A stretch of DNA of 64,000 nucleotides from Ophelia neglecta (GCA_965285935.1 OZ260661.1:137392001-137456000), one strand, 5' to 3'. Counted from the first letter of the stretch, positions 5,009 through 53,159 are shown. Notes: a model not told the origin generated them from the letters alone. Program-made: numbers and translations.

Positions 5009-6141
5009 TTACTTGGAACAGTCTGACCAGTGCGTTCGCAATGAATAGATTCCGTTACCCTTGGTTCCACTGAAGTACTGCAGGGTGGAAGCTTGCATAC
5101 TGAACCACGTCCCACCTGTGAGAGGCATTCCGCCGTAGGGAGGAACAACTCGGAAGTTGGTCGTCAACTGTCACGACAAAGTACAGTGGTTTTCACATAG
5201 GGGTTATGTATATAAATACATATTGTACTGAGGCTCAAATGTAAAGACGAGTTACCGTTGCAGTAGAAAATTCTTATTTTGGAAGTGCATTTATCATATG
5301 CTATTGATGAATGTCTACCTCAGGCATACTTACCGAAATCTGTGTAACCATGGATGTGTTAAGTCTAGTGGCATCCCAGCCCGTGTATCCACTAATGCTG
5401 GTGATATGTTCCCCAGGCTGAAGGACGAGACCGTAGGTAGACCAACCAACACCGCCAGTGGAAGCAACCCCGACCAGAGGCGCCCAGTAAGCTCCGTACT
5501 TCACCGCCATGCTGGAACAAAATATCATACCCCTACGATGACATATAACGATATTTAATGTGCCCTGTGCAGAAACCACAATGTAATTAAATGCCAAACC
5601 AACTTGGATTAAGTTTGTTTTTATGTTTCAATTATATAGAACACCAGGGCAAATGTTGGGTCATATTCAGAAACACGTTACATCACTGTAAAGAACGTGT
5701 GAGCGCAATTACTTTCGCCTTGGTCGGTTTTTTTTATATATAAACGCCAAAGTCTAGCTGCACTCTTTTGAACTTTAAAGCTCCTTCTTCTAAGTGGCAT
5801 TTTATACGATTTCCAAAGTTGCAGTACTATTTTTTTTCGAATGACATGTACGTAATCATTGTTAAAGAAAAGCGTTGTTACCTATGCCCCATTAATTACT
5901 AACGTACGTCAGAGGCAGTATAGCACCAAAACAAATTACCCCTGTTAGTCAAAAGCCCAGATCTTAGTTTACATTTGGCCTGGTCATAGAGATCGTACAT
6001 ACCCAGTTAAACTGGTAGCGTTGTTGGACATGTATACATGGAAGACAATCTCGGTGATAGGACCATAGCTGCTATACGACATGCCCTGATTGAAAGTCGC
6101 CCCGATGCCTAATGCTCCATACGGTCCTCTTGTGCACTCAA
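5009..6141 (-). CDS. Gene A jacalin-like (beta-prism I / ZG16-like) domain, three exons
   Basis: 6003-6141 '[28 protein letters not shown]'; 5334-5511 '[36 protein letters not shown]'; 5009-5167 '[36 protein letters not shown]'. These match jacalin hallmarks (L.PGE.IT.I.G, TTN..GPYG, FSG, terminal HW). Confidence 0.87.
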
Positions 6142-15100: not shown

Positions 15101-17419
15101 AGATAGACGTACTCGTGTAAACTGTAACAGTTAGACTTACCTTTGTAAACAGAGACAAATAGACTTACCTGCGTAGACAGTGACAATAAGACTAACCCTC
15201 GTTAACGGAAACAGGTGGACTTACATGTGTAAAAGGTGACTGATAGACTTACCTGTGTATACAGCGACAATTAGACTTACCCTTGTAAATAGTGACATAT
15301 AGACTTACCCGTGTAAACGATGACTGTTAGACTTACCTTTTTAAACAGAGACAAATAGACTAAAACGTGATAACGGAAACATGTAAACTTACATGTGTAA
15401 TAGGTGACTGATAGACTTACCTTTCTTAATAGTGACAATTAGACTTACCCGTGTAAATAGTGACAGATAGACTTACCCGTTTGTCGGTTGTCGGATCCCG
15501 ATGACTCGTCTGTAAAATACAAAATACGCTTTTGGTTCCGTATGTGAGTCATTGTTATATTAGTAATACTAATTGAAACATTCTTATATGAACCCACCAT
15601 TTTCCAAATATGGAAAACGCTAGATAGTAAATTGTTCCAAACTCGAGATACGTAACTTACATTTTTTCGAATTGAAAAGTCCTAATCCAAATACTACTCC
15701 AAGTATCACAGCAAGGATCACTAACAGAAGGCAGCAAGTCAGAGCCCAGCAACATGGTCTTTAATAAACATTGACAATTAAATAGTAATGGTATTCACTA
15801 CCAAATAAACCAAGGCTTTAACGTAATTTTAGTAATGTTGTACACGCGTTCACTCTTTTATTATTTGATTTTATAATGCACACTGTTTTGTTTCAATCTA
15901 ATTTAATTTTCTTTCCATTAGATTTTACCTTACCTTTGCGTATGTACGTATAACTTGATTGATTTTTTAGGGCAAGTCCAATAACTCTTTTTCGTTTGGC
16001 AGTTAATGTTAAAAATACAACAAATTAACCTTAATAAAAGCATGCTAATATAAGTATTAATGAAAATTATTGAATGAAAGGGCCATTTGTAAGTCTCACC
16101 TTGCCCAGCATGGTCTTGGGCCCGGTCTTGGTCGTCTCTCCACCGACACTCCGATAGCTCTGAGAAAAGGGTAATATATGCATAAAACAACGAACGCAGC
16201 GTAATCATACGTTACGCTACACTACTCACAGTTTGTTGTTGATACAGTAACGTGATTTTTATAACATCAACATTGCATAATGTTCAATCTTAATACTTGT
16301 AGACATATAAGGCGATTTATAATCCACCAAATTGTTTCATTTTGCGATAAATAAACACTGTTGAAATTTATGTAAGCAATTCTAAGACAATTTGTGAGAT
16401 CAGGGACTGGAAAATATACTGCTATCTCTTGCAAACCTAGTTTTACCATTTTTCGTCTGTGCAGCACAAACTTCTGTCGTAAATACCTCTTTCTTGATGT
16501 TGTTTCCCTACCGTTCTCTTTGGGTTGACTGCAAAGCTTGGGTCGTTCCACAATGATGTTAGGATCATGCACACATTATTCCTTATGTTTTACGTGTAAT
16601 TATCATTTGTATTAAGACCCTCTGCATATGAACAAACTGCTTTCGATTACATAGGGAAGAGGCAAGCATATTTGACCTAATTTGCAGGTTTCCCTTCCCT
16701 CACACATTATTCAAACGACCGATACATGCCTAAGATCCCAGGTTGCATTTTCTGATAAATATGAATCAAATAATTTGTTTTCAATAGTTACCTTGGCTTT
16801 CTGTCAATCACCCTGGAAGACAAATCAAATATGTACAATGTTTAATGGAATATAAATGGAAAAATAGAGACGCCCGGACACACTAATTGTGGTTGCAGTG
16901 CATAACAAATGCCCCCCCCCCCCCCTCCTTTCCGCCCTTTAATTGTACTTTGATGGAATCAGAATAAAATATGGAAGAGCATCAAAACATTAATCTCAAA
17001 CTTGAATGGAATAAACGTGCCTACCCCTTTTCACCCATGATATGTAGTTTTTTTTAACGTGAGCCTGTCAGTTGTAAGAAGTTCTACTTTCGAGTAAAAA
17101 AGCGATACAAAAGTTATATGCCCAATAAAAACTCAGTCAGATGCTCCGAAAGATGCTCCGAAAGTCATGGAGCGAATATTTTAAAAACCGTAATATATTT
17201 TCTTGACCATATTGCCACAGATTGTCGTGATTTAATGTTTAATTGGTAAACGGGTATATACATTTCCTATAACAGGTATTATAAGTACACATTTCAAAAT
17301 TAAGCCTATATCCTAATTCACGAAATGGAACCCCAAATAAATGTTTTAACTCCCAATGTTACCGACATAGGACGAAATACTTACTCGGAGCGCCCTACTG
17401 GCCTGCCATTTTGCCTCAT
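5009..17419 (-). CDS. Gene A: type II transmembrane protein with 14 EGF/EB-like modules and a C-terminal jacalin-like lectin domain (~840 aa, 23 coding exons)
   Basis: Exons in transcript order, all GT-AG with an open frame: 17385-17419, 16792-16812, 16487-16528, 16100-16159, 15661-15758 (TM), 15477-15509, 14616-14753, 13915-14043, 13420-13533, 12468-12605, 11857-12000, 11414-11560, 10586-10699, 10064-10183, 9664-9768, 8763-8876, 8256-8384, 7301-7411, 6889-6999, 6586-6729, 6003-6141, 5334-5511, 5009-5167 (TAA). A possible further first exon ends ATGCG|GTAAG at 18258-18262. The two smallest N-terminal microexons are the least certain. Confidence 0.88.
6586..14753 (-). CDS. Gene A EGF-like repeat region: 14 phase-1 symmetric exons, including calcium-binding-type EGF and EB-like modules
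   Basis: Calcium-binding-type examples: 14616-14753 [26 protein letters not shown], 10586-10699 [37 protein letters not shown], 8763-8876 [29 protein letters not shown]-like C..KP.S.C modules lie at 13915-14043, 12468-12605 and 11857-12000. Confidence 0.92.
10958..11294. mobile_element. Two abutting copies of a Tc1/mariner-pogo-type MITE (family 1)
   Basis: TA-CAGTGAAACCTG...CAGGT(A/T)(A/T)CACTG-TA at 10958-11136, plus a second, left-truncated copy at 11135-11294. Internal AGACCACC repeats. Confidence 0.85.
11714..11886 (-). repeat. ~50-bp tandem copies of an exon 3' end plus donor site
   Basis: AACTTACCA(T/A)AGGGAGTACACCCCCACACATATCTT-like units at ~11717, ~11767 (partial), ~11800 and the real exon end at ~11850. 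Confidence 0.88.
12854..13087. mobile_element. Family 2 MITE (~230 bp, GGGCCCGGTTTC-type TIR, PIF/Harbinger-like)
   Basis: GGGACCGGTTCCTGGAA...TTCCAGAAATCGGACC; internal CTGGATTTGGTCTTAA is shared with the copies at 39095 and 40868. Confidence 0.7.
13190..13383. repeat. Dispersed repeat ending in poly-C/CCCGGG, related to the sequence at ~205-280
   Basis: CAGCTGCACACC(C/T)GTATGCAAA..TTTGAAA occurs at both ~13328 and ~243. Confidence 0.5.
14845..15026. mobile_element. Family 1 MITE
   Basis: TACAGTGAAACCTGT...ACAGGTTTCACTGTA, TA flanks, ~180 bp. Confidence 0.88.
15027..15485 (-). repeat. 28-bp minisatellite (~16 units), each unit carrying a copy of the GTAAGT splice donor
   Basis: ACTTAC recurs in a 28-bp register at 15135, 15163, 15219, 15247, 15275, 15303, 15331, 15387, 15415, 15443 and 15471 (the real donor). 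Confidence 0.92.
15661..15758 (-). CDS. Gene A transmembrane (signal-anchor) exon
   Basis: 98-nt exon, phase 2 to 1, encoding [32 protein letters not shown]. It is preceded by basic [13 protein letters not shown] and has AG/GTAAGT boundaries. Confidence 0.88.
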
Positions 17420-33619: not shown

Positions 33620-34338
33620 TACGTAGTAGGGTTAAACCAGCGAACAACAGGTGTATCACTACGCTGAAATGGATAATATACTAAAAATTGATAATATCAT
33701 AAACTAGATAACCATCAGACTATTAAACACATTTCAGAATGCAGCATTTGATTTTTTCGTAGCAATTAAATTTTATTCTGCTCCCAATGACATTTCTTTA
33801 TATATATAATTAAAAATGAACATAACTGTTTTTATGTGTAAGGGTTGTCACATCAATAACACATTAAACGTCTAATGATGCGGGCTTTTTCCTGCCTTTT
33901 AGAAAGAAAAAAAGCGATTGTTGATAGACTAAGTAGTAAAACAAATCGATTTACCCTTAATTAATAAGGCTGACATTGCTCTGGTGATTTATGTGGAGTG
34001 CTAAACAATAACTTGTCTATACCTGATAATATTTAATATACAACCTGATAACACAGCTGCATTGGGGAATCGCAAAAATGATGTTCATGTTTTCTTGGTT
34101 AGGCGTAGAGATAGACTATATTTAGGCTGTACGAATAACCTTAAACCTGGCGCTGACACACCCCAATACCTGTTCTTTTCGTACCAGTGTGTCTCGTTTT
34201 TCCATTGTTCTTCGTATTAGGATTTACAATATGCCTATCAGTGAGTTTTTAAAGCGTTCAGGACATATGCACGGATTGATTTAAATTTTTTCCGATAGTA
34301 CTATTATAAATTAAACGTTGTTTTCCTTTCTAGCTACC

Positions 34339-37300
34339 ATGTCATCAGGGCGAGGATATGCCTTGTCCAGGTATAAACCTCGATACAGTTCAAACTACGC
34401 CCCTGAATACGAGCCAAGATACAACACTGGATTTAAATCCCAGTACGAATCAACGTACGAGCCAACCTACCGCGACATCTATGACCGGGCCCCCGCACTA
34501 CGGCACTCACATAGCCCGCACTATCCAACCTATGATTACAGGTAAGCTTCTTTAAGACGGTTTTATCAAATGAAAAAAACAACTCCGATGTTTTGGGCCT
34601 TTGATTAAATTTTGAGGAGCTGAGACTTGGCGGAGGTACACACCATAAGATAATGACTCAATATTACACTTGTATAACCGTTAACTCTCAGCCTAATTCT
34701 ATGTTTAAAGAACCTCAAACTGAGCCTTAAATAAACCTTTAGAAAATAGGCTTCATGCCCTCCAATACGTGGCCATGGCCTCCGCCGCCGTCTAACCTCC
34801 GCGCCTTCGGGCCTCCGCGCTTATTACACGGTTTGCTATAAAAAATTTAATCAGTACCCCTTGTGCTTGTTAAACAGCCCGGCTATTTCGTATTAAGTTC
34901 CCCCGCCTGTTATGCCGATTTTTTTGGCAAATTCTTATTTTGATACATTGTACAGCTTAACTCATATCAGACAGAGGTAGACTTCAGCGTTTCTTCTGTA
35001 TAAATATAGCTCTATGCGCTGAGAATGAATATTTTCCGACAAGTTAGTTTGTTAACACAATTCATCAGTTTCAGATTTACAGTTAATACGGTGAAGTGCA
35101 CGAACTGAAATGTTAATACCGTAAAATGCCGTGTTTTGACACATGGTCTGCTCGTTTGTGGCCAGTGAAATGTCGGGTAATTTCGGAATGGTTCAATTCC
35201 GCGCAGTAAATAAACTTATGTGCGCGGAGTTACCCTGAATACTGTATACAAGTAAACGATAGGGAAATACAGTGGCGTATTCAGGGGTGGGGGGGGGGGA
35301 GGGGGTGACAGCCGCCCCCCCCCTTTTTTGCTAAAAGGTGGGTCCGGACCAAGACCTATCTCTGGACCCACGCAAGGTGGTTTCAGAGGGTTGGTAGCGG
35401 AGACAATCCAGACGTTTGCCAAATGTAGACACATTTGTTGGAAACAAATCATAGGTCATGACAGCCTCGGAAAATTTTGCCCCCGCTCCCCTTCCTGAAA
35501 TCCTGGATACGCCACTGAAAATGCATGCCTTTTCAATGTGCGGGGAATAAGTCCACTAACAACGCGAAATATGCCTACTTTCTGCGCGGTGTTAGCCGAC
35601 TTCCTGCGTGGAGTTAGACGGCTTTCAGCCGGAATAAACACATGCCCGATGTTACCCGCTTTACGCATATAATGATTAAAATGATTATTACTTAGAAAGT
35701 CCAAAAATAATAGTAATTAAATTATACGGCAATGTTTGATTATTCGTACCACATACCCGTTGGCTGTTGTCTGGCAAACAGTCGATTGCAGGAAAACACG
35801 CAAAACACACTTATTTAGAGTTGCGTCCAATCTGTGATCGATCTTTCCAGTCATGAGCAGCTAATATGTTTTCATAATTCGAATCACAAAGGCAGATATC
35901 TGCCAAACACTTGTTTTGCAGTTACACGAGTCATAAACAAGTCAATGTGCGTCTCATTCATTTTCAGCCGGAATAAACACATCCCCGATGTTACCCGCTT
36001 TACACATATAATGATTAAAATGATTATTACTTAGAAAGTCCAAAAATGATAGTAATTAAATTATACGGCAATGTTTGATTAGCGGTTGTCTCAGGGGCGG
36101 ATCCAGGAATGTCCAGGGGGGGGGGGGGCACTCCATGTGGAGGAATTGAGCGGGGGAGGGGGGTGGCCACAGAAGTTACATACGTACGTCTAGTTGCCTA
36201 TGTTTTGGGCGCCTAGATGGCTTGTTCAGAGTTTGAAACAAATTTGGTAGGGGGGATGGGGGAGGGGGCACCCCCTGGATACGCGCCTGTGTCTGGCAAA
36301 CAGTCGATTGCAGGAAAACACTCAAAACGCAATTATTTAGATTTGCGTACAATCTGTGATCGATCTTTCCTGTCATGAGCAGCTATTATGTTTTCATAAT
36401 TCGAATCACAAAGGCAGATATCTGCCAAACACTTGCTTTGCAGTTACACGAATCATAAACAAGGCAATGTGCATCTCATTGTAAATATAAAATCACCATC
36501 TTTCATATAACTTAACTCTCTTTATTCACAACAGTTCGCCGAGAATAGTTGAAGGTGAACCAATATATCTGCGCGGAGAAGGAGGGCGTGGCCAGTGGTT
36601 TGGAAATTGTGGCCAGTGGTTTGGAAATTGTGGCCGATCGTCAAGGTATATCTTCATCTCTCGCTCACAGAGGGGAAGCATATCTTCCTTCTATTTCCTT
36701 CATTGAATATTTCTTAGTTAAGAAAAAATGACTCCCCCCCAAAAAAAAAGGAACAACTGTGAATCAATTGGACACAGACTAATGTTGTCCTCTATGTTTC
36801 CACGTCTGATCTAATACTATTTATACAAATAAAAAATATATATACACAGTGAAACCTGTGAATTAGCACCACCAAAGGGACTGGAAAATACTGCTCTGAT
36901 TATAGAGGTGGTCTGTTGAGACAGATTAATTACTATTGAAAGTTTACATTTGGTCGTTGTATTAGTGGTCGAAATTGGCAGGTGGTCCGATTATAGAGGC
37001 GGTCTTTAAGGCAAGTTTCACTGTATATATTTATATATAAATATAGGAAATTTATGTTGTGAAACATAGAATTATGTATGATTGATTGATAATCAGTAGG
37101 TATTACGGTAGAAGACTACCCACAAGTGATTATCGTAATATTTCGGATTATATGGAAAATTCTGAAACTTTTAAGGAATAATCATCTTATTTTTTTGGTT
37201 TAAAACTACAATAAAATACGCTGAAAAGTATAGAATTAATTTAAACCCTATCTTTATAAGTACGAGTCAACATTCACAGAGTGTGCTTAATTCATACTAC

Positions 37301-40300
37301 TTTCCCAGAGTGTGCTTAATTCATACTACTTTCCCAGAGTGTGCTTAATTCATACTACTTGCCACTTGCAACATTGAGAAAATCATAGCTGTCTAGAAAG
37401 GCTGGTGACCCCCTAATGTTGTTTGTCTTAATGTTGCCTTTACCTATAGTGGACTAAAATTGGCAAAAGTATAAAAAATATCTTTCTGTTTTGACTTATG
37501 GCCCAGTCACAATGTCGGCGATCTGTCGGGGATTAGTTTTGGCCGGGGGTCGTCGTAGAAAATAAAGAATCCTTGAACAATCCTAGCAATAATCCTAATA
37601 AAAGTGGAGCAGTCACATTGTCTGAGATTTTTTCAAGGATTTTGACCCGGTTTTGTCGAAAAATCGTGGGATTAGCCTCCGATCGCCTCCGATGCAAATC
37701 GGAGGCGATCGGAGACGATATCTGCGAGCGTCTTTTCTTTTAATTTTTCCCCCACTACGGCGATTTACTACGATTCCACCGTACGATTTGTCGGAGACGA
37801 TCACAGAAAGCGTCGCAGGGCGCCTCCGATTCAGTCGGAGGGCGCCGGAGACTAGTCGCAGACATTTAATCTCAACCTAAATTTCCAATCCCACACAGAA
37901 TCTTGCGACTAGTCTCAGATTATTCGGAGGACGCCTCCGATTAATCGGAGGGCATCGCAGGTCATCGGAGATTGTGTCTGGGATACCCAACATGGGTGAA
38001 AAATCGTGCGAGCAATCTTCAAATTTTAAGTTCAAAGTTGGGGACCGCGACGGGTGTGGCGATGCCTAAAAAATCTGCGACAAGCCGCAGGCGTCCGGAG
38101 GGCGCCTCCGACGGGTGCAAAATCGTGAGATCTGTCTCAAGATTTTGTTAAAATTTCCCGGGTTTTACCCATCGCCGACGCATCGCAACTGATTTGTGAC
38201 TGGCCCATTATGAGTAGTTTTCTTGCGGTGTCACAAGCAAATCTGAGTGATTAGGCTTATTATTTCCTTGTATGGGCGACACGGAAGCAGCTGCACATAT
38301 TTTGGCCTTCTTACCCTCACTACTCACACCTTGTATTGATGGTGACCATGACCTTTTGTTGTTGTTGTTTTTTCAGTTGTAGGACGTGGGTACTTTTAAC
38401 AGGTGTCCTGTTGCTTGTACTCATATTAGCCCTTGGTCTTGGGCTCGGTCTGGGCTTAAGGGGCAAGGAAAGAGGTAAATATACCACGTGACCTAAACAA
38501 ACCAATTGATTATGACTGTCTTTTACTCTAATGTCAAATAAAAGTACTAAATGATATATTATATCCAGTGGCGGATTCAGCCCCCCCCCTTTTGTCAAAA
38601 AGTGGGCCTGGACCAGGGCCTATTTATGACCCCGGCAATGTGCATTCAGAGGGTTTGTAAGGGGACAATTGAGACATTTGCCTTGCCAATCTTGGAAAAT
38701 TTGGCCCCCCTTCCTGAAATCCTGGATCCGCCACTGATATGTTATTATATTTATGGTACATGTACATTTAATCATACTATTACAGATATTGATGGGATTG
38801 GAAATAAAGGAACAGGTTTATAAATAAAACTAAAATGTATCTATTTCCGTTTTTCAGCCACAAATACGACTCTTGGTAAGCAACTCTTGGTAAATTTCAA
38901 TAAAGAGAAACCAAATTGCATGATATTTTGTAGCGCAGATAATCATGAAATGCCGATATCGCGTTATGACTAGTTCCATTTCAATATTGTAGCACCTGTC
39001 CAGTGTCCAAACCTCGATTGTTTTTCTGGTAAATGTTTGAGCACGGGAGAAACCTGTGTACCACGTAAGTGAACACTTTATCATTTCGTAATCCGGACCC
39101 AGTTTCAACAAGAGGTATTAAGTTTAGGGATAAGATAAGCTTATTAACGATTAGCTGTTGCCGCGCTAATCGGTGTTTTCATTGGCCAGAATTAAGTTTA
39201 AGACCAAAATGGCTAGGGTTAAGACCAAATCCAGCTTACAAATCTCAGTTTATCAAGTTAAGACTGATTAAGCAGTTTAATCCTGAATTAAGTTCGATTT
39301 TTGACTTAAGACTGCTTCCTGAACGAGCCCTCAACGTCACATGATGCCACATGATGACCCATGCTTTGTTTAACAAATTGGTAAAGCCAGTCTGAGGTAT
39401 ACAGCACATAATTCTACATTATCATTGAACACCTACACTAGTACAGGTGTGAATATCCCCTGTCCTCTTAAAGAACCTACACCTGAGTTTATATCACTGT
39501 ACAGTAAGAAGCTACACATGATTTATAATCTAAAGAATGAGTCATACTGGCCGACTTCGGGCGATCTACGAGTTTAGAAGCCCAGGAGTTGCACCGGAAG
39601 TACTAAAATCCGATGTCACGTGACATGCTAATTGACGACGTTGGTAGCCTGCAGGTAATACTCACGTTGTATGTATGTAAACAAGAAAGCCCCCCCCCCC
39701 CCACCATCACCACCACCAACCCTCCCATTGCGTCACCAAAAACAAACCGAAAATAATATACCCATGTGATGCGGGTAAGCTGCAAATGTACCGCGTAAAC
39801 GTTTATACTAGTAAACCTGCCAAGGTAAGTGATCAGTCTCTTTATATTACTAGTCGAATAACTACTTCTTGTACGTGTGAACGGTTAAACATTCGGTAGA
39901 GGATGAAGTGTTGATTCAGTGCGCATGCCTCAAAATGAATTAGCATAAACTGGAGTAACTACTGCAGTTTTTCCGACGTCGGCCCCTGACGCTTACAATG
40001 TCTTAAGTGTAGCGAAACTCGTTTGTAGATACACTGCCCTAGATATGAAAGATGGATTTGCCCGTCCTGAAAAAACATCGTTTGTCACCAAATTATGATT
40101 TAATTGGACATTTTCCATTATTTTGTCAGTTGAGGGTGATTGCAAGACGGGTCAGGCGTGTGTTAATGGCGGTACATGTCAGTTAACATCTGGCAGCTAC
40201 AAGTGTGTGAATTGTAATCCCGGCTGGACAGGGGACTTCTGTGAAACAGGTATCACATTGAATGGCACACAAAACTGTTTGAAAGGCGACTTTCAGATGA

Positions 40301-43300
40301 ATATGTCTATATTCGATGCTTCAAGTCAGTCGTGTTGCAATATATATTGTCATATTAAGTATTTTGTTTATCGGAAGTGTTTCGCACATAAAATCAGTTA
40401 TTTTTTTTAGTTCAATATTCTTCACGAAAGAATAATGCTTGCGCAGGGAGCTATGCTTTTTTATCCATCCTATCTCCAGAACCAGAGCATAGGATATTGT
40501 CTAGATATCGATTAAAGAAGGCACAAAGAATACAATTAAATACATCTTGCAGGGTACAAGAGTTGCAGTCCTGAGACCTGTATCCAGGGTACTTGTGACG
40601 CCAGTGAGTCAGTCTGTCAGTGCAGCGCCGGCTACAAGGGCTATAGATGTGATGTTTGTACGTATTAATATACTTCCATTCATGCATTTTTTACCGACCA
40701 AACAAAATTAGGATGGCCAGAGACCTCATAGTTTCATATTTGCATAATTTTTAATTTATATTCGTACTTTCATAATTTAGGAGATAATGCACGAATTTTG
40801 TGGTTGATCAGAAGGATACAAAACAAGCCGAAGGCGTGTTTGTATCCCTGTGATTAACCGAGAAACTGGGCCCGGTTTCCAAAAGCGGTATAAGGTTTTT
40901 GGATTAAATTAATTATCGATTAGCTGAGACTGGGTTTATCAGTGTTTCCATTGACCAGGATTAAGTTTAAGAACGAAATGGTTAGGTTTAAGACCAAATC
41001 CAGTGTCTAGAAGCCTCAATTAGCACGCTAAGACCGATTAAGCACTTTAATCCTATGTTAAATCCGATTAAGAGGTAATACAGCTTCTAGAAAATGGGCC
41101 CTGGGCATTAACCCGTTTAAGCTCCTCGCCAACTACCGGTGCTTAAGGTCTATACTTACAGTGAGCAATAGGACCAGTCGGATATGTTTCATATTGCTGA
41201 CCAACAACCACTTTTCTTACCTCCAAAGCTGATTGCAATTAAAAGGCAGTGGTAAGGCTGGGATAAGTGGGGCTACTTTCAGCTGTTCATATGGGAATTT
41301 AACATGGGAATGATGTTTTAAAAGCCCTTACTTACCTTAAACAAAACTTTCAGGGATGATTAACATTTTAGAGGGCTTTCCATTCAGGTAAATTTCACAT
41401 TTGTGTGATAGCTACAGGTTTCGCAATGAACATGGAACCGCTGCAAGTCTGTAGTCTAGCCCCACATTCAAGTGCAGACTATTGGTATGCAGTGCTGTCA
41501 CCTCCTTGCTAGCAGGCTGAAATAGAATTATTACATCACTGACTGACTGCCCGACTGACCCTATTGCATCCATTATTTGAGTAGTACGATATATGGTCAA
41601 ATGCTTGATACTTTATCTATGAAGCATTTCGGGGTAGTGTTTTTTCATAGTGAATGCGCCGCTTTACGTATTTCTGTATGTTTTTGTTTTAGCAAGCGGC
41701 CAAGGCTGCGAGGCAGACCCATGTATGTTTGGTATATGCGTGCCCAGTGGCTCAGACTGGTCCTGCAACTGTTTCACGGGATACAGTGGACTGTACTGCC
41801 AAATACGTGAGTGTTGTTCTCCACAAGAGTGAATACCCTGCTGATGAGCAAATTTATTATTCAAGAATAGTCCATTAAGTTCGTTCCGAATAATTATGAA
41901 CCAGCAGCCACAGGCCCACATACAATACAGGGAAATATACAGTGAAACCTGTGAATTAAGACCACCCAAGGGATTGGAAAATGCTGGTCTGATTTCAGAG
42001 GCGGTGGGTTTAGAAATGTTGTTTAATATTGAAAGTATACAGTATGGTCCTCATATTAGTGGTCTGAATTGACATGTGGTCTGATTATAGAGGTGGTCTT
42101 TAAGGCAGGTTTCACTGTATTATTAAGTCGCAATAAAATTCCTTTTGTGGGTTACTATTTGTAACAACAAAAAGGAGAAATGGTGAAATACACGAGAATA
42201 TATGTACCCGCATAAGTACTACTCAGTATTATTTCGGCGTTAACGGATGAATTGGAACATGTACACATATTAATTTATAGTCTGAAAACTTGTAATAACT
42301 GTGCATAAATACTATCAGTTAGTAAAACAAATGAAGAAGTAAGTACCCGGTAAAAACATCAAGCATTAGTGAATAATAGCAAATCCCCAGGAACCACCTG
42401 CTTGGGAACACATATATCACATCCCAGTTCCCATTGGGAGCGAGAAATATTCTGCAGTTTTCCATGGTGCGAGTCAGAGCACAGAACAAAGGAGTCAGTT
42501 ATCACCGTAGGACAGAGAGGACATAGTGGCTAGGAGTGCCTATTGGTGTAGTCCAGGGGGACATCGATTCCTAGGAAGAAATGAAGCTATCGTTATAAAT
42601 TTCCCGCATCTGTGATAACTATATCTGTCCAAGTATGCATGGCGAGGGACTCGTTGTAGATGTAGTATAATTATCAATGCAATCAAATACTTATCAGTAT
42701 AAAGGAGACATTATTGTTTTGAGAACACTCTATTAGCAATTACAATTATACGGATATAAAATATCAGTATATTAAACCCTAGGAAGCTAGGTGTATGCCG
42801 TTCTTTTGCATCAGATATTTCCTTTGTTCACTTTAGTTATCCTTTATTTGTTTCTGTAGAGTCCATGTTTTATGCACGAAATATGGTATTATATGCGTCT
42901 GTATAAATGATGCGAATAAAACGCTCAATGACTATTTCAATGTTTTCAATGTTTCAAAACATTTTATTTTCAAGCTTCAAGCATCGAGTGCAACACCAAT
43001 CCGTGCCGGTATGGTTACTGCACAGCGGTAGGTACCGGGTACTCGTGTTCCTGCTACGGCGGTTGGACTGGGCTTAATTGCGAAATACGTGAGTTAAGTC
43101 AATATAACTTTCCTCTCCAAATGTGAAATCCTCATTGGGTACTGTAACTCGGTATTTCTTCCTAGTGAGTCGGTATTTTTTCATATATATAATGTTGTGA
43201 ATTTCATGCAGATGGAAAACAACATTTAAACAATATTTTCGGACTCTTTAACTTTCTCTGTGTATTATTTGTGGAAGCTGTTTGAATAGAAACATATTGT

Positions 43301-46300
43301 CTTGCTAAAATACCTTAGAATTGACATCGAGCCTCTATTTATTTTGTGCCTTCAATGGCACTTGAAGGTAAAAGTGATGAAAAATGTCCCTTGAATGTAG
43401 CCATAAAGAACGATGTTGATGACACAAGAAAATATAATTAATTTGTATTCAGGATTTGTGCCACTATATGTTTACCCTGTTTCAGCACACGGTAGCAACT
43501 GTGGATCCAACTATTGTGTGAACGGGGCCTGTGTCGACAAGGACCCAACAGGCTTCGAGTGTGTGTGTGACACGGGATACTCTGGAACCTACTGCGAGCT
43601 CAGTAAGCCAATATGAAATACATAAGCTTTTTTATGAAACCGAGGAAAAAAACATTTTCCCACCAAACAGAGAAAAAGCCTTTTTAATCGTCTGTTTAAT
43701 CTTCCGAATCATGAGGTGAATGGCCAAAAACATCATTTCCCATCTTCGTAGGTGAATTAGCCTGGAACGAATTTAACAATTACCAACCTAAGAATCAATA
43801 TCATTTGCAATGAGAATAAGTCATCAATTCTCCGCAATGAGAGTCTGGGCACAAAACAATCTAATAAGTGGAAAGAATAAAAACTAACCTGCAAATAAAA
43901 ATCATCCTAACGCCATTTTCAGATCACCCATTCGTACCATGCCAATTAGGCCCCCTTGCGCCAAAGGATCGCCTAATATACGCTGCTATTTATTCACAAA
44001 CGACTTTGTTCCGCACCACTGTACCATTTGGCTAATCTAGCCCCAAATCAAATCGGCGGTGGTTAAAAATTATCTCATGCTCGGCAGTCAAAATGATATT
44101 ATAGTTATGAAGCAAGTAATTAGAATTTGTGTTAATAATCTTGGGCACATGCAAAAACATAAAGATAGAATACAGTTAAAACTGGTGATTTTATTTTGTT
44201 TCATGCCGTTGCATTCCGTTTCTTAACTCATCTAAAATAACTTTCAATCTTGCCGAATAAGTCACATCATTATTGTACCTCTTACTCTAAATACGCAACG
44301 TAGAATCATTCCATTGCACATGAATATTATCTATTAGAAAGCAAGAATAAACTATTCGTCTGTCTCTTCTCTCTTGTACAAGTCTTATAAAAAGTCGAAA
44401 AACGAAAACACTGTGCACCGCTAATCTTCTGCTTACTGCAATTTATTCATATTACGTTTAATAAAGAAACTAATTATATTCTTCGACACAAATAGCCACG
44501 ACCGATGGATGCGAAGGAAACCTCTGTCAGCAGGGTACATGCGTACCTAGCACGGATGGTTTCACTTGCGAATGTGAGCCAGGATTTGAAGGCAACTTTT
44601 GTGAAACACGTAAATATATACTTTCAATTGGGTTCTTATGTGAATCTGTTGTGTCTTTGTATTCTGAGTATTGTTGAATGAAGTTTAAGATAAAACTTCT
44701 GTCTTGATAACAAGTTTAGCATATAGTGCCATGTTTAGCTCAATTTTTTAAGGGTCATCGGTTGGACTAGTTTCCAGTAGGCCAATAGAATATATCGTCT
44801 ATTTTTAACAGTTCATGCGAATTAGAGACAGCTGTTTTACGTTCAAACCCTTGGGTATGATGTGTAACTAACTTATTAACAAAGGCTTATATTTGTAATT
44901 TTAGCCATAAACACCGACTGTGACAGCAACCCGTGTGCGTCCGGGACTTGCATGCAGCAGACCTGGGGATACCTGTGTCAATGTCCGGTTGGGTTCCATG
45001 GGCAAAACTGTGAAATTAGTAAGTTACATGCAAAAGGATTTCAGTAGAGATAACTACACAGCTTAGCTCTTTGGAAGACAACATCCAAAATTATTGTACA
45101 TCCATCGTTTGTTATAAATGTTATGTTCAAGGAATGCAAAATCATTTAAGAACATCATAAACTTTGACATTCCAAATGGGGTTTTATTCGGATAATAATA
45201 TTTCTTTTTTTTTTATTCTAGAGACAGACCCATGCGTAGGGAACACGTGTGTTGTAGGTCAGGGAACGTGTGTTGCGGTCGGCACAGCGTACACATGTAA
45301 TTGTTTGGCAGGCTTCAGTGGCACTAACTGTGAAAATAGTGAGTAAAGCCTGTTCCGTTTGACTTCTGTCGGCCTTATGCGCTTAAGCAAGGCTGTATTC
45401 TAAAATGCATGTTAACTTGCGCGTACAAAGGAAACCCTTACAAGATCAAGTGCTTTTCCGGCGATACGGTAGTGAAAGATTAAAAAAGGATGAAAAACAG
45501 CACTTGCCCGTTATGTTGCAAGCTGAACGCCTCCATTAGTTTTATACTTTTACGTTATATATTCCCGAAAAAGGATATATTGCGGGCATGCTTGCAACCT
45601 GATTTGCAGCATTATTGAACAAAAGGAATATATTTAATGCTGACGACAAACAAATTGGTTTCCTTAGTTAATCAGAATAGAATTTTAATTGAGGGCATGT
45701 ACTCGTTCTGTGTGTACCTAAATATATGGCCACCATAAGTAATCATTGGAATAGGAAGAGAATATGTTTACTTGATTAATATATAAGTACGTAAACACTA
45801 TAGTTGGGTATCCTCATTTTTTTTATAGTTGTTGATCCTTGCCTTGGTAATCAATGCACTACCGGCCAAGGGACTTGTACGCCTGCCGGAAGCACATATG
45901 ACTGCACCTGCAGCCCTGGATTCAGTGGGACCTACTGTGAAGTCGGTAAGTTGAATAAGAGGCACCACTTGTGATTAACAGAAACACTGCCTGTTCATGT
46001 GATTTGAGTAATACCACTTGGCAACGCCTGTATTATGCGTTGCATGGCTTACATTTTCTATGCACTTTCAAATTTCGTAGAATAGCGAGAAATGTGAAAC
46101 AAAAACTACAAATCAAGTATACTTTATTATGAATGATGTATCTTACCCCATATTTCATGTTTCCAGTTGACGACCCCTGCATGTTGTCGCAGTGTATTGA
46201 TGGCCAGGGTCTATGCGTTGCATCGGGTATGGCTTACTACTGTTCTTGCAATATAGGATTCACAGGACCATTCTGCGATGTAGTTGGTAGGTTGTGAACA

Positions 46301-48105
46301 TTATTGTATCTAAACAATTCACCTGTAGCTGAGCGATTCAACCACCAACACAGTTATTCCTATTTTTATTGGTTCACATTAACATACTATTAAGGACTAA
46401 TAACTATCTATGTATCAGTTGTTTGGTGAAACAATTAATTAATATTTCAGATTGCTTGATTAAACAAATCGCTTTTCTCAAATTAAATGATTATGAAAAG
46501 CAACTATATTTTGAAAGCGAACTTAGTAAACTTTCTTTTTGGTAACGGTGGATTTAATAACTAGTCCCTATAGGATAGCAACTAAATATATATGATCTAT
46601 TGTACAACGCAAATAAGCGTCTTGGACATTTCTGAAGAGAATGAAGCAAAATAACTACAGAACGGTTAGGATTCGGTTTCAGTTTACCTTTAGGATGAGA
46701 GATTTGGTTAGGCGTGGCCCAGTCTAGCACCCTATTCTTATGAAGTTTTATGTTCATAAATAAGTTTATAACATAAGGTATATAATAGAGTACAAAACAA
46801 AACAATACTATGTATTGCCTCGGTAGCTTTTAATTGAAAAGGCCATATCCACGGCGTTTAAAATTGGGATGCTCGCTGATTATGCAAGGTTTAGTAAAAT
46901 GGGCCCTTGAGAAACCTTCAACCAGGCTGCAAACTTAACCGTTGATCATAGTATCAAATGTTTAACCTATACTTCACCCAAATATACATGTACCAGCGTA
47001 GCCTCTTAGCGCTCTAATCATTTATATGCTTATGTACTTCAAAGCCCCGTGTTCCGGAGTCACATGTTCCAACGCAGGTACATGCAGTGAGGTCACTGGC
47101 TCGTACCAATGTACATGTAACCTGGGCTACAGCGGAGTCGACTGCGAAATAGGTATACAATTATCAAACCACCCAGATATACTATTATTATTATAAACTT
47201 TTCTTCTTCTTTCTTCTCTCTAATCACTACAAGTACCTAAGTTTGAGAATAAGTGTGTTACTCTCTCTGCTTTGTTTTGGTATTTGCACTGCCCATAATT
47301 GTTTTTCTAGTGTGATCTGGAACTTTCTGTTGTCCTGCTCCCTTTGCCATGTTTATTTTATATGTTTGTATTTACTGTATTATATAGTGTACTCGGGTGT
47401 ATTACTATGCCAATAAACACTTTCGAATATACAATAACCGAAAGTATGCGGAAGCATGGAACACGTTTTAAGAGATCATCGCTGTATATTATGAAATAAC
47501 TTTATATGCTGTCTCTTACACACGCATGAATGCATGTAATATTTCACATTTTTGCAGACCCTTGTTCCGGCATTGACTGTTCTAACAAAGGGACTTGTAG
47601 CGTACTTGGCAGTGGCTATATGTGTACCTGTGATTCCGGCTATAGTGGAATAAACTGCCAAATAGGTAAGGACTAGATAATTAAAAATCAACAATTTGTG
47701 CAGTTTTGAAACAAGTGAACAACTAACAAATATACTAAATCCGTCCGATTTCACACAAAAAAACTAAATTGCAGACCCACATTACATGACTCATCAGTGT
47801 CATGCACGTTCATTCGTTTGCTACCAAATATGATAGAATAAACACTTAAATATTTTGCCATCACTTAGCATAAGAAGTGATTTAAACTTTTTTAGTATGT
47901 AAGTCAAATGCACCATTCGTTAGTGTAGGCCAGTTACTGATGTTACGAGAAAACACTTAGAAAAAAAACGCATATTCTTTTTTTCTATTGGAACATTGCT
48001 TTATTATATTCTTTTAAAATTTATACAAAATTTAAAATGGAAAGCAGTGCCAAAGCCTCTCATCGATGTGTATACAATCGCTCTCGTTGTCTTTCAGCAC
48101 CATAA
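34339..48105 (+). CDS. Gene B: type II transmembrane protein with Tyr-rich cytoplasmic tail and 12 EGF-like modules, no lectin domain found (~605 aa)
   Basis: Exons: 34339-34541 (ATG, Tyr-rich), 36535-36645, 38377-38474 ([34 protein letters not shown]), 38786-38815 (weak donor), EGF exons 40130-40249, 40553-40657, 41693-41806, 42975-43088, 43486-43602, 44496-44609, 44905-45018, 45222-45338, 45829-45945, 46167-46286, 47045-47152, 47558-47665, and a putative last exon 48098-48105 (ctttcag|CA CCA TAA). The frame is open throughout; the terminal exon is less certain. Confidence 0.85.
35270..35517. mobile_element. Family 3 poly-G MITE
   Basis: CAGTGGCGTATTCAGG...CCTGGATACGCCACTG; internal sequence is shared with the 38566 copy. 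Confidence 0.82.
35623..36480 (+). repeat. ~335-bp tandem duplication in gene B intron 1; the second copy is interrupted by a MITE
   Basis: TTTCAGCCGGAATAAACACAT...CAATGTGC(G/A)TCTCATT at 35623-35958 and 35962-36480. Confidence 0.92.
36092..36289. mobile_element. Family 3 poly-G MITE with TGTCT target-site duplication
   Basis: TGTCT|CAGGGGCGGATCCAGG...CCTGGATACGCGCCTG|TGTCT; the empty site is present in the duplicated copy at ~35766-35781. Confidence 0.85.
36845..37025. mobile_element. Family 1 MITE
   Basis: CAGTGAAACCTGTG...AAGTTTCACTGTA. Confidence 0.85.
37277..37360 (+). repeat. 29-bp perfect tandem repeat, ~3 copies
   Basis: CAGAGTGTGCTTAATTCATACTACTTTCC repeated. Confidence 0.92.
37500..38206. 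mobile_element. ~700-bp CpG-rich non-autonomous DNA transposon (PIF/Harbinger-like termini)
   Basis: TIR GGCCCAGTCACAA / TTGTGACTGGCCC; many internal CGCCTCCGA / TCGGAG(G)GCG inverted motifs; no transposase. Confidence 0.75.
38377..38474 (+). CDS. Gene B transmembrane (signal-anchor) exon
   Basis: 98-nt phase 2 to 1 exon, the same length and phases as the gene A TM exon. It has a hydrophobic run ending LGLGLGLGL and a strong polypyrimidine acceptor. Confidence 0.87.
38566..38736. mobile_element. Family 3 MITE
   Basis: CAGTGGCGGATTCAG...CTGGATCCGCCACTG, flanks ATATC / ATATG. Confidence 0.82.
39095..39330. mobile_element. Family 2 MITE
   Basis: GGACCCAGTTTC...CTTAAGACTGCTTCCTGAACGAGCCC; internal TTAAGACCAAATCCAG. 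Confidence 0.7.
40868..41101. mobile_element. Family 2 MITE
   Basis: GGGCCCGGTTTCCAAAAGC...GCTTCTAGAAAATGGGCCC; internal TTAAGACCAAATCCAG. Confidence 0.75.
41938..42119. mobile_element. Family 1 MITE
   Basis: TACAGTGAAACCTG...CAGGTTTCACTGTA. Confidence 0.88.
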
Positions 48106-51656: not shown

Positions 51657-53159
51657 TTAGCAACCAGCCCATACAGTCTCTAGTGTTGTCATACCATCAT
51701 GTGCGACGCCCTTTATATACAACAGCTGGGAGTCGAACATTGAGAATGGCTGCTCATTAGCTTCTGGGGGTCCTCCGACAGGCCCGTAGGTCTGAAAGTT
51801 GGTATCGATCTGAAGAATGGCGAAGCACGGGAGTTAGACTAAGCAAAATGGTTAACCAAACACAGTCATTTATATAGATGCGAACCGTCAGATATTGTAC
51901 AGGTTTATAGGCATCAATCCCCGGTTCCTTCAATATCCTGAATAATAATAATAGGCCAAGCACACTTTCATTGATAACTGATGTCAACTACTTATCTCAA
52001 GGGATATATAGTGTTATTACTGTTATTATTAATTAAATTATTTTTCAGTCGTAGAACCAAACCTTGCTACGAGTGGGCCTGCAGCAGATAGTTCCTTGGT
52101 CTGGTTTCTGGAAGGGGCCTTAACTTTTAAAGCAGATTAAAATCAGGATTGAGATGCTTTTTTCGTTCTTCACTAGCTAATCAGGGTTTCTCGAAGCATT
52201 TAACATACACAGTTTGCTCTATAACTTAATCAATGGAAACACTCATTAATACGGTATCAACTAATCTGTCACAGACTATTCTAAACCGTAAACTTAAGAC
52301 CTCTTCCAGAAACCGGGCCCAGATGATTTAGGACTGATTTAGGACAAAGCATGCATGTACTATAATTCGTCTTAAAAACATAATTTACTGAAATTCGGGT
52401 CTCTGTATTTGGGGCTGAACAATATGATTCGACGCATGTTCTCTGGCTCTTCACTGGGTGCGGGGAGTCACGTGGGTTAGTGTAGGGTTATTCTTAGTTC
52501 TGTCACCGCGATGCGCCGCACACCGCGGCGAGGAATATGGGTAGCCTTGAAATTGACTGTACTGAGAATCCTACCGTGAGTTGTGTTATTTTGTCGTCGC
52601 CACCCAGGGCTCCGTCCTCGCCCCATAGTCCATCAACTCTAGTAATGAATTCGCCTGGTGCAAGAATTAAAGTCTCATCAGTTCTCTTATTGTCATTTTC
52701 TTTGTAATCACCTGCCCAGTCACTCCATGTGTCACCGTACCGCACACGGAATCTGTGCGTTAACAAGAACATATATCATGACATTTCTTGCTGGTATCAT
52801 TATGGAATATTTGGTCCAAAAAGTAATCTGCTTTTAATTTGGGAACATGTTCAAAGCTTGCCTCTTATTCATATAATGAGGGTCTTGCTTGGCCATGTGT
52901 TTTTAAGTAACAGACACACCATTTCGTCTTTTGGTGGTCTGCGGAATTCATATCTTAAAATACAACTCGCTGTTCATGAATGTCGCATGGCATTGCAGAT
53001 ATACATACGCTGCAATTGATTTGAATCCATTTTCTTCATGAATCTGGAATTCCCAGGCAGTAATATCGCCATTTGCATTGTATAGTGCCTCGTGGTCATA
53101 CGGAGCATCTCTGGTAGTGGCCACATTACCTTCAGGTCCCTTTGGGCAGTTAGCCTCAA
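51657..53159 (-). CDS. Gene C jacalin-like domain, three exons
   Basis: 'ANCPKGPEGNV..GDITAWEFQI', 'FRVRYGDTWSDWAG..LILAPGEFITRVDGLWG..ITQLT' (178 nt, same size as in gene A), 'IDTNFQTYGPVGG..LLYIKGVAHDGMTTLETVWAGC*'. Intron phases 1, 2, 0 are the same as in gene A. Confidence 0.87.

What the first reader, a model, noticed from the sequence alone, without database searches (positions are those of the whole stretch)
34339..34541. Strict i+4 tyrosine ladder in the cytoplasmic tail of gene B
The first coding exon has 13 Tyr in 67 aa. Aromatic residues fall exactly every fourth position at Y12, Y16, Y20, Y24, Y28, F32, Y36, Y40, Y44 and Y48 ([40 protein letters not shown]), while the intervening residues have diverged. 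This suggests selection on spacing rather than a recent DNA repeat. It is neither a canonical ITAM nor ITIM; YRDI fits a YxxPhi motif. The predicted gene A tail has no Tyr at all. Inference: a multivalent phosphotyrosine/SH2 docking array or a clustering (sticker-spacer) signalling tail.
Basis: partly seen in the sequence, partly recalled or inferred. Interest (0 to 1): 0.78.

Follow-up and report, generated by a model that had tools for sequence, protein, structure and literature searches.

The report
Evenly spaced tyrosine repeat tail
A predicted membrane protein of a marine invertebrate starts with a floppy inner tail carrying an aromatic residue at exactly every fourth position ten times; the pattern is real and looks selected, but it occurs in this one gene only and has no RNA, ortholog or signalling-motif support.

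Summary
Window 34339-34541 (+) reads as 67 codons with 13 Tyr, and aromatics fall at residues 12 to 48 in strict steps of four: nine Tyr and one Phe. Only about 5 in a million composition-preserving shuffles give such a ladder.

It is an old, degenerate 12-nt tandem repeat, roughly Y-E-P-T/R. The Tyr codon is kept while the spacers have drifted almost to random, which argues for selection on a translated sequence.

The exon has a good start context and a strong donor. It joins in frame to a transmembrane exon and then 12 EGF-like exons, which implies a type II protein with this tail in the cytoplasm.

The ladder is not a family feature:
- The closest paralog (gene C) has a homologous first exon of only 26 codons, with no ladder.
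- Gene A and a fourth family member show none either.
- The exon is single copy in the genome.
- Neither protein search found a relative.

No RNA evidence could be obtained. No ladder tyrosine fits an ITAM, ITIM, YxxP, YxN, YxxM, NPxY or PPxY motif, and one fits YxxPhi.

My best reading is a paralog-specific, selected aromatic "sticker" repeat in a disordered tail. SH2 docking is possible but unsupported. Interest is modest.

The parts
34334..34541 (+). First coding exon of gene B: acceptor AG at 34332-34333, start ATG at 34339 in an ACC-ATG context, 67 codons plus 2 nt, donor AG|GTAAGC.
   Evidence: The layout (acceptor, TACC-ATG, phase-2 AG|GT donor) matches the first exon of paralog gene C. 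The exon is single copy in the genome.
34372..34491 (+). The ladder itself: ten 12-nt units coding residues 12-51, with an aromatic first residue in each (TAC x7, TAT x2, TTT x1). Position +1 is often Glu or Lys, and position +2 is Pro, Ser or Thr in 8 of 10 units.
   Evidence: Shuffle P is about 5e-6. Spacer nucleotide identity is 0.33 against 0.287 when shuffled (P=0.03). Lag-12 autocorrelation is 0.47.
34492..34541 (+). His/Pro/Tyr-rich end of the tail exon. An H-S-H-x-P-x-Y piece here is the only part resembling the tail of paralog gene C.
36535..36645 (+). Putative 111-nt phase-symmetric cassette exon (37 codons) holding a perfect 21-nt tandem duplication. It could be skipped without a frame change and is the least certain part of the model.
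   Evidence: Single copy in the genome. No equivalent was found in gene C.
38377..38474 (+). Transmembrane (signal-anchor) exon: a juxtamembrane Cys, a hydrophobic span of about 23 residues ending in a Gly-Leu repeat, then basic residues. It ends in phase 1.
   Evidence: The same Gly-Leu repeat and juxtamembrane Cys occur in gene C, gene A and locus L011.
40123..47662 (+). Twelve EGF-like exons of gene B, one six-Cys module per exon and all open. They define the extracellular side.
37496..38210. Young interspersed repeat inside the intron before the TM exon. It is not part of the gene product, but it is the only part of the region found in public runs of other organisms.

Best explanation
Shown: window 34339-34541 is a single-copy open exon that begins a predicted type II membrane protein. 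The N-terminal tail is followed by one transmembrane helix and then 12 EGF-like modules. The ladder is an old, degenerate in-frame 12-nt tandem repeat, roughly Tyr-Glu-Pro-Thr/Arg. Its aromatic codon has been kept while the other nine nucleotides have drifted almost to random.

Inferred: that contrast, together with the absence of any stop among 13 Tyr codons, each one mutation from a stop, means the stretch is translated and selection keeps an aromatic residue every fourth position. The tail is cytoplasmic, because there is no signal peptide and the disulfide-rich EGF modules must lie outside. It is disordered.

Proposed mechanism: the evenly spaced Tyr/Phe residues, together with seven Arg, act as weak multivalent 'stickers' separated by Pro/Ser/Thr/charged spacers. 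The tails would then self-associate or hold low-affinity partners under the membrane when the ectodomains are brought together, and tyrosine phosphorylation is a plausible switch. The array is a gain specific to this paralog and not a conserved family module.
For: Ladder and its non-randomness.
12-nt periodicity with near-random spacers: the Tyr codon keeps 27 of 30 nt, with TAC and TAT both in use, while spacers are at 0.33 identity against 0.287 shuffled.
Single copy.
Frame: only frame 1 of the exon reads through into the TM exon.
Gene C parallel: gene C's first exon has the same acceptor, TACC-ATG and phase-2 AG|GT layout, which supports the start and the join to the TM exon.
Intact ectodomain: all 12 EGF exons are open with six Cys each.
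Disorder: the single-sequence AlphaFold2 model has mean pLDDT 57.8 and is coil apart from one turn at residues 44-49. Pro sits at position +2 in 4 of the 10 units.
Phe at residue 32 keeps the aromatic character but not a phospho-acceptor.
Literature analogies: uniformly spaced Tyr stickers drive RNA polymerase II CTD phase separation (PMC11502803). Synaptophysin's disordered cytoplasmic tail is built of Tyr-based pentapeptide repeats (PMC7948965).
Against: No RNA evidence was obtained for the exon or for any of its splices. The public runs that matched the region hold only an intronic repeat.
No ortholog was available, so conservation across species is untested.
The paralogs lack the ladder, so it is dispensable for the family's core function.
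Gene B also seems to lack the jacalin-like C-terminal exons that genes A and C carry, so it might be a truncated and possibly decaying copy.
The spacers carry more charge than classical prion-like spacers.
Ten stickers on a 40-residue stretch is low valency for phase separation without clustering.
The mechanism rests on analogy only.
Confidence: 0.45

Rival explanations
1. Phosphotyrosine docking array. The ladder tyrosines are phosphorylated by Src- or Syk-type kinases and recruit SH2 or PTB proteins in multiple copies, as in p130Cas or LAT.
For: There are nine Tyr in a disordered cytoplasmic tail. Glu at +1 in four units also puts an acidic residue at -3 of the next Tyr, which many tyrosine kinases favour (my own knowledge). 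Earlier notes of this scan report Src-type kinases and Tyr-motif receptor tails in this genome (not checked by me).
Against: None of the ten units fits YxN, YxxM, YEEI-type, YxxP, ITAM, ITIM/ITSM or NPxY by inspection. Strict spacing is not needed for SH2 docking, and known docking arrays are irregular. One position is Phe. The array is absent from paralogs, and no homologue was found.
Confidence: 0.2
2. Tolerated by-product of minisatellite expansion. A 12-nt satellite expanded inside a fast-evolving, weakly constrained tail exon and has no function of its own.
For: 12-nt satellites that read Y-x-x-x in one frame are scattered in this genome, in L002 and L005-L008. The neighbouring putative exon carries a perfect 21-nt duplication. 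Gene C's tail is itself a short internal repeat. Tails differ completely between paralogs.
Against: Neutral decay should erase the Tyr codons as fast as the spacers and should create TAA or TAG stops. Instead 27 of 30 aromatic-codon nucleotides are kept while the spacers are near random. The genomic satellites, by contrast, carry stops.
Confidence: 0.15
3. Gene-model artefact. The open frame is not coding, for example a 5' UTR or intergenic remnant, or it is not joined to the TM/EGF exons. Alternatively, gene B is a dead truncated copy.
For: There is no RNA support. No protein in the libraries matches. A second frame is also open across the stretch. Gene B lacks the C-terminal lectin-like exons of its paralogs.
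Against: Only frame 1 continues in frame into the TM exon. Start context and donor are strong. Gene C has the same exon layout. All 12 EGF exons are intact at about 50% divergence from gene C. Retention of Tyr codons without stops argues for translation.
Confidence: 0.15
4. Sorting or ubiquitin-ligase signal array. The tail's six x-P-x-Y elements (four within the ladder, two near the exon end) and the single YxxPhi serve endocytic adaptors or WW-domain ligases.
For: Y-R-D-I at residues 44-47 fits YxxPhi. Six Tyr are preceded by Pro at -2.
Against: None of the six has Pro or Leu at -3 as PPxY/LPxY requires. There is no NPxY. A single YxxPhi is expected often by chance in a Tyr-rich sequence.
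Confidence: 0.05

Closest known systems
Synaptophysin C-terminal cytoplasmic tail (Tyr-based pentapeptide repeats)
   Same: A disordered cytoplasmic tail of a membrane protein built from short tandem repeats, each starting with Tyr. It is discussed as a possible self-associating region and adaptor-binding site (PMC7948965).
   Different: That repeat has period 5 and Gly/Pro/Gln spacers, sits at the C-terminus of a four-pass vesicle protein, and is conserved across vertebrates. Here the period is 4, the spacers are Glu/Pro/Ser/Thr/Arg, the tail is at the N-terminus of a single-pass EGF protein, and only one paralog has it. No sequence homology was found.
RNA polymerase II CTD heptads (Y-S-P-T-S-P-S)
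   Same: Uniformly spaced Tyr stickers separated by Pro/Ser/Thr spacers, with phosphorylation dissolving the assemblies (PMC11502803). Several units here (Y-E-P-T, Y-E-S-T) resemble the first four heptad residues.
   Different: The CTD has period 7, is nuclear and has dozens of copies. No homology is implied.
p130Cas substrate domain / LAT-type multi-tyrosine docking regions
   Same: Many Tyr in a disordered region that could give multivalent phospho-dependent binding.
   Different: Those use defined motifs (YxxP, YxN) at irregular spacing. None of the ladder tyrosines carries such a motif.
Teneurins (type II membrane proteins with EGF repeats)
   Same: The predicted topology: cytoplasmic N-terminus, one TM helix, and extracellular EGF modules directly after it.
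   Different: There is no match to any Pfam family, and so none to the teneurin intracellular domain, in exon 1. The Teneurin-type EGF hit is only sub-threshold (E=0.031). No NHL, YD or toxin-like regions are present. The paralogs instead end in a jacalin-like module.

Membership tests
ITAM | Two YxxL/I elements 6-8 residues apart | tested here: not met
   Only one YxxI is present (residues 44-47), and no second YxxL/I occurs in the 67 residues.
ITIM / ITSM | [S/I/V/L/T]-x-Y-x-x-[I/V/L] | tested here: not met
   The only YxxI has Pro at -2.
YxxPhi endocytic signal | Tyr followed at +3 by a bulky hydrophobic residue, in a cytoplasmic tail | tested here: met
   Y-R-D-I at residues 44-47. This is one short match of low information content, and the cytoplasmic location is inferred.
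PPxY / LPxY (WW-domain ligand) | Pro or Leu at -3 and Pro at -2 of the Tyr | tested here: not met
   Six x-P-x-Y elements are present, but -3 is Lys, Ala, Glu, Glu, Ser or Tyr.
NPxY (PTB ligand) | Asn at -3 and Pro at -2 of the Tyr | tested here: not met
   None is present.
p130Cas-type YxxP array | Repeated Tyr with Pro at +3 | tested here: not met
   No Tyr has Pro at +3. Where Pro is present it sits at +2.
Teneurin | Teneurin N-terminal intracellular domain, then EGF, NHL, YD repeats and a toxin-like end | tested here: not met
   Pfam gives no family for exon 1, and EGF_Teneurin is only sub-threshold at E=0.031. ORF and tblastn screens of the region after the last EGF exon found no further family exon, but no Pfam scan was run there. 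Genes A and C end in a jacalin-like module.
Local type II EGF family (genes A, B, C and L011) | Short N-terminal tail, juxtamembrane Cys, TM helix ending in a Gly-Leu repeat followed by basic residues, then EGF exons | tested here: met
   Gene B's membrane-proximal EGF exon is 49% identical to gene C's.
Local type II EGF family (genes A, B, C and L011) | C-terminal jacalin-like module | tested here: not met
   It is present in gene C (Pfam Jacalin E=0.0056, below cutoff) and in gene A (tblastn 1e-4 and 3e-9). Nothing was found on the + strand between 47.7 and 52.6 kb for gene B.
Sticker-and-spacer disordered region | Evenly patterned aromatic residues in a disordered, low-complexity sequence, with demonstrated self-association | tested here: inconclusive
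   The patterning is met and low model confidence is met. Self-association cannot be tested with these tools.

The most novel reading that the evidence does not exclude
A single-pass EGF-repeat receptor has evolved, from a 12-nt satellite, a selected period-4 Tyr/Arg sticker array on its cytoplasmic N-terminus. The array would drive membrane-proximal clustering switched by phosphorylation. This would be a signalling-tail design distinct from ITAM/ITIM or SH2-motif tails, and an example of de novo birth of a functional tail module in one paralog.
Probability: 0.12. Interest if true: 0.6.

Novelty: new variant of a known kind. Interest (0 to 1): 0.3.

Why it matters
If the tail is expressed and the spacing is selected, it would be a compact natural example of two things. 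One is a membrane receptor gaining a multivalent tyrosine module by expansion of a short DNA repeat. The other is strict aromatic spacing, a rule worked out for nuclear condensate proteins, operating on a receptor tail. As it stands it is one unexpressed-until-shown exon in one species, with no conservation and no recognisable docking motif. It does not open a long-standing question. It is a modest curiosity worth a look when RNA data for this species or its relatives exist.

Tried and rejected
The 21 low-share runs (about 0.06 of words) come from other organisms. Laying four of them showed that they hold only the intronic repeat at 37496-38210 and nothing on the exons. The three runs that hold the stretch well look like the source DNA.

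Homologues of the 67-residue exon:
- phmmer against 1.84 billion representatives gave two hits (E=6e-6 and 9e-5). Both are unrelated internally repetitive proteins matching on Tyr/Pro-rich pieces.
- The word search found nothing.
- Pfam found nothing.
- The ESM Atlas gave no usable hit.
- Even the self protein did not appear, so this species' proteome is probably not in those libraries. That weakens 'no ortholog' to 'none available'.

Own genome: the weak hits L002-L008 are non-coding 12-nt satellites with stops, not paralogous exons.

Full report
**Observation**

Window 34339-34541 on the + strand translates as 67 codons plus two bases. There are 13 Tyr. Aromatic residues occupy positions 12, 16, 20, 24, 28, 32 (Phe), 36, 40, 44 and 48. 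In 200,000 shuffles of the same residues, a ladder of ten at any period from 2 to 7 appeared at a frequency of 5e-6. At every period other than 4, the longest observed ladder is 2 or less.

**Nature of the repeat**

Cut into ten 12-nt units, the first codon is TAC seven times, TAT twice and TTT once. The other nine nucleotides are on average 33% identical between units. Base-shuffled spacers give 28.7% (P=0.03), so little trace of common descent remains. A few unit pairs are still close: units 4 and 8 share 7 of 9 spacer nucleotides, and units 7 and 8 share 6 of 9. Tandem Repeats Finder detects only that remnant, at 34443-34470. Nucleotide autocorrelation peaks only at lags 12 and 24.

This is therefore an old, degenerate in-frame 12-nt tandem repeat, roughly Tyr-Glu-Pro-Thr/Arg. 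Position +2 is Pro, Ser or Thr in 8 of 10 units.

Each of the 13 Tyr codons is one mutation away from a stop, yet none has become one, while the spacers have drifted almost to random. That contrast is hard to explain unless the stretch is translated and aromatic residues are under selection. This step is inference. It assumes that the units share an origin, or else that Tyr was selected repeatedly. Either way it implies selection.

**Gene context**

- Start of the exon. It begins just after a polypyrimidine tract and AG acceptor (34332-34333). Its ATG sits in an ACC-ATG context, and the exon ends at AG|GTAAGC.
- Reading frame. A second frame is open across the stretch, but only frame 1 continues in frame into the next exons.
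- Putative exon 36535-36645. It is 111 nt and phase-symmetric, holds a perfect 21-nt duplication and is single copy. It may be a cassette exon or not an exon at all. Skipping it keeps the frame.
- Transmembrane exon 38377-38474. It codes a juxtamembrane Cys, about 23 hydrophobic residues ending in a Gly-Leu repeat, and then basic residues.
- EGF exons. Twelve exons between 40.1 and 47.7 kb each code one six-Cys EGF-like module, and all are open.
- Topology. There is no N-terminal hydrophobic signal, and the disulfide-rich EGF modules must be extracellular. The protein should therefore be type II with the Tyr tail in the cytoplasm. This is inference, and the charge distribution around the helix is not decisive.

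**Relatives inside the genome**

The window holds two more genes of this type on the minus strand: gene A with EGF exons at 6.6-14 kb, and gene C with EGF exons at 55.1-62.4 kb. Gene C is the closest paralog. Its membrane-proximal EGF exon is 49% identical to gene B's, and the next-best genomic hits are far weaker.

I fetched the 10 kb beyond the window end as L009 and found two gene C exons there:
- The TM exon lies at L009:670-577 on the minus strand.
- The first coding exon lies at L009:1952-1873 on the minus strand.

That first exon has an acceptor, then TTACC-ATG, then 26 codons and a phase-2 AG|GT donor. This is the same layout and phase as gene B. It contains four Tyr and a doubled His-Gly-His-Ser-His piece, but no period-4 ladder. 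Only the His/Pro/Tyr end of gene B's exon resembles it.

Gene A's candidate N-terminal exon and the short candidate tail of a fourth member (L011) show no ladder either. Their exact starts were not settled.

Gene B's tail exon is single copy at both the protein and DNA level. The weak protein-level hits elsewhere in the genome (L002-L008) are non-coding 12-nt satellites with in-frame stops. They show that satellites of this period, some reading Y-K-P-R, are common raw material in this genome.

The ladder is thus a gain specific to this paralog, not a family module.

**Relatives elsewhere**

- Pfam finds nothing in exons 1-3.
- phmmer against 1.84 billion cluster representatives returned only two unrelated repetitive proteins.
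- The word-indexed search returned nothing.
- The ESM Atlas gave no usable hit.

The query's own protein was not found either. These libraries therefore probably lack this species, and 'no ortholog' means 'none available to me'.

**Expression**

The run search returned 21 low-share runs from other organisms and three high-share runs that look like the source DNA. Laying four of the low-share runs showed contigs only on 37496-38210, in the intron, and nothing on any exon. That element is a young interspersed repeat with at least 40 copies at 92-98% identity. No RNA evidence exists for the exon or its splices.

**Structure**

A single-sequence AlphaFold2 model has mean pLDDT 57.8 and pTM 0.12. 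It is coil apart from one helical turn at residues 44-49. Pro in four of the ten units also argues against a continuous helix, so 'i+4' should not be read as one helical face.

**Motifs**

By inspection, one Tyr fits YxxPhi (residues 44-47). None fits ITAM, ITIM/ITSM, YxN, YxxM, YxxP, NPxY or PPxY/LPxY. Six Tyr have Pro at -2, but none has Pro or Leu at -3. Glu at +1 in four units places an acidic residue at -3 of the next Tyr. That is compatible with tyrosine-kinase substrate preferences (my own knowledge), but it is weak evidence.

**Interpretation**

The best-supported statement is that this is a real, selected, paralog-specific aromatic tandem repeat in a disordered cytoplasmic tail.

For mechanism I favour a sticker-and-spacer role:
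- The aromatics are strictly even in spacing.
- One position is Phe, which is aromatic but cannot be phosphorylated.
- There are seven Arg as possible cation-pi partners.
- The spacers are Pro/Ser/Thr-rich.

Two known cases are analogous. In the RNA polymerase II CTD, uniformly spaced tyrosines act as stickers and phosphorylation releases the assemblies (PMC11502803). Synaptophysin has a disordered cytoplasmic tail of Tyr-based pentapeptide repeats (PMC7948965). The Gly-Leu repeat in the TM helix contains GxxxG spacings, which could add helix-helix association (inference).

Phosphotyrosine docking remains possible but has no motif support. A neutral satellite expansion is disfavoured by the codon-retention argument. 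A model artefact or dying gene cannot be excluded without RNA, particularly because gene B seems to lack the jacalin-like C-terminal exons found in genes A and C.

**Verdict**

This is a new variant of a known kind, Tyr-based tandem-repeat disordered tails, and its interest is modest until expression and cross-species conservation are shown.

Noticed in passing
window 37496-38210: A 715-bp interspersed repeat lies in the intron before the TM exon. It has at least 40 genomic copies at 92-98% identity, many of them split into the same two halves (1-260 and about 262-715). Near-identical copies (about 97%) occur in assembled contigs of runs labelled as three other organisms and in a marine metatranscriptome. 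It is either shared by close relatives or a widely spread mobile element.
   Followed up: partly
window 51660-53124 (- strand) and 5012-5627 (- strand): Genes C and A end in exons with weak jacalin-like lectin similarity (Pfam Jacalin E=0.0056, below cutoff; A-to-C tblastn 1e-4 and 3e-9). The family therefore looks like type II TM + EGF repeats + a C-terminal beta-prism lectin. Gene B has no such exon in the 5 kb after its last EGF exon.
   Followed up: partly
window 38378-38474; 15660-15760 (-); L009:577-670 (-); L011:7850-7935: All four family members share a TM exon with one to four Cys at the cytoplasmic edge, which are possible palmitoylation sites. The hydrophobic span ends in a Gly-Leu-Gly-Leu repeat (GxxxG-type spacing) followed by basic residues.
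   Followed up: partly
window 36588-36635: A perfect 21-nt tandem duplication (2.3 copies, 100% match) lies inside the putative 111-nt exon 2 of gene B. It duplicates a seven-residue Gly-Gln-Trp-Phe-Gly-Asn-Cys piece and is a very recent event.
   Followed up: no
L009:1873-1952 (- strand), outside the window: The predicted first exon of gene C is itself an internal repeat (His-Gly-His-Ser-His twice, about 10 residues apart). The tails of this family seem to evolve by short repeat expansion.
   Followed up: partly
window 35700-36480: Two copies of another repeat lie in the first intron of gene B. The same short open frames recur at about 35688-36034 and 36027-36484, on both strands.
   Followed up: no
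L005 and L006 (G000:C9:75.68 Mb), L002, L007, L008: Long non-coding 12-nt satellites whose translation reads Y-K-P-R, Y-R-P-I, Y-S-P-G and similar, with stops. They are possible raw material for in-frame Tyr ladders.
   Followed up: partly
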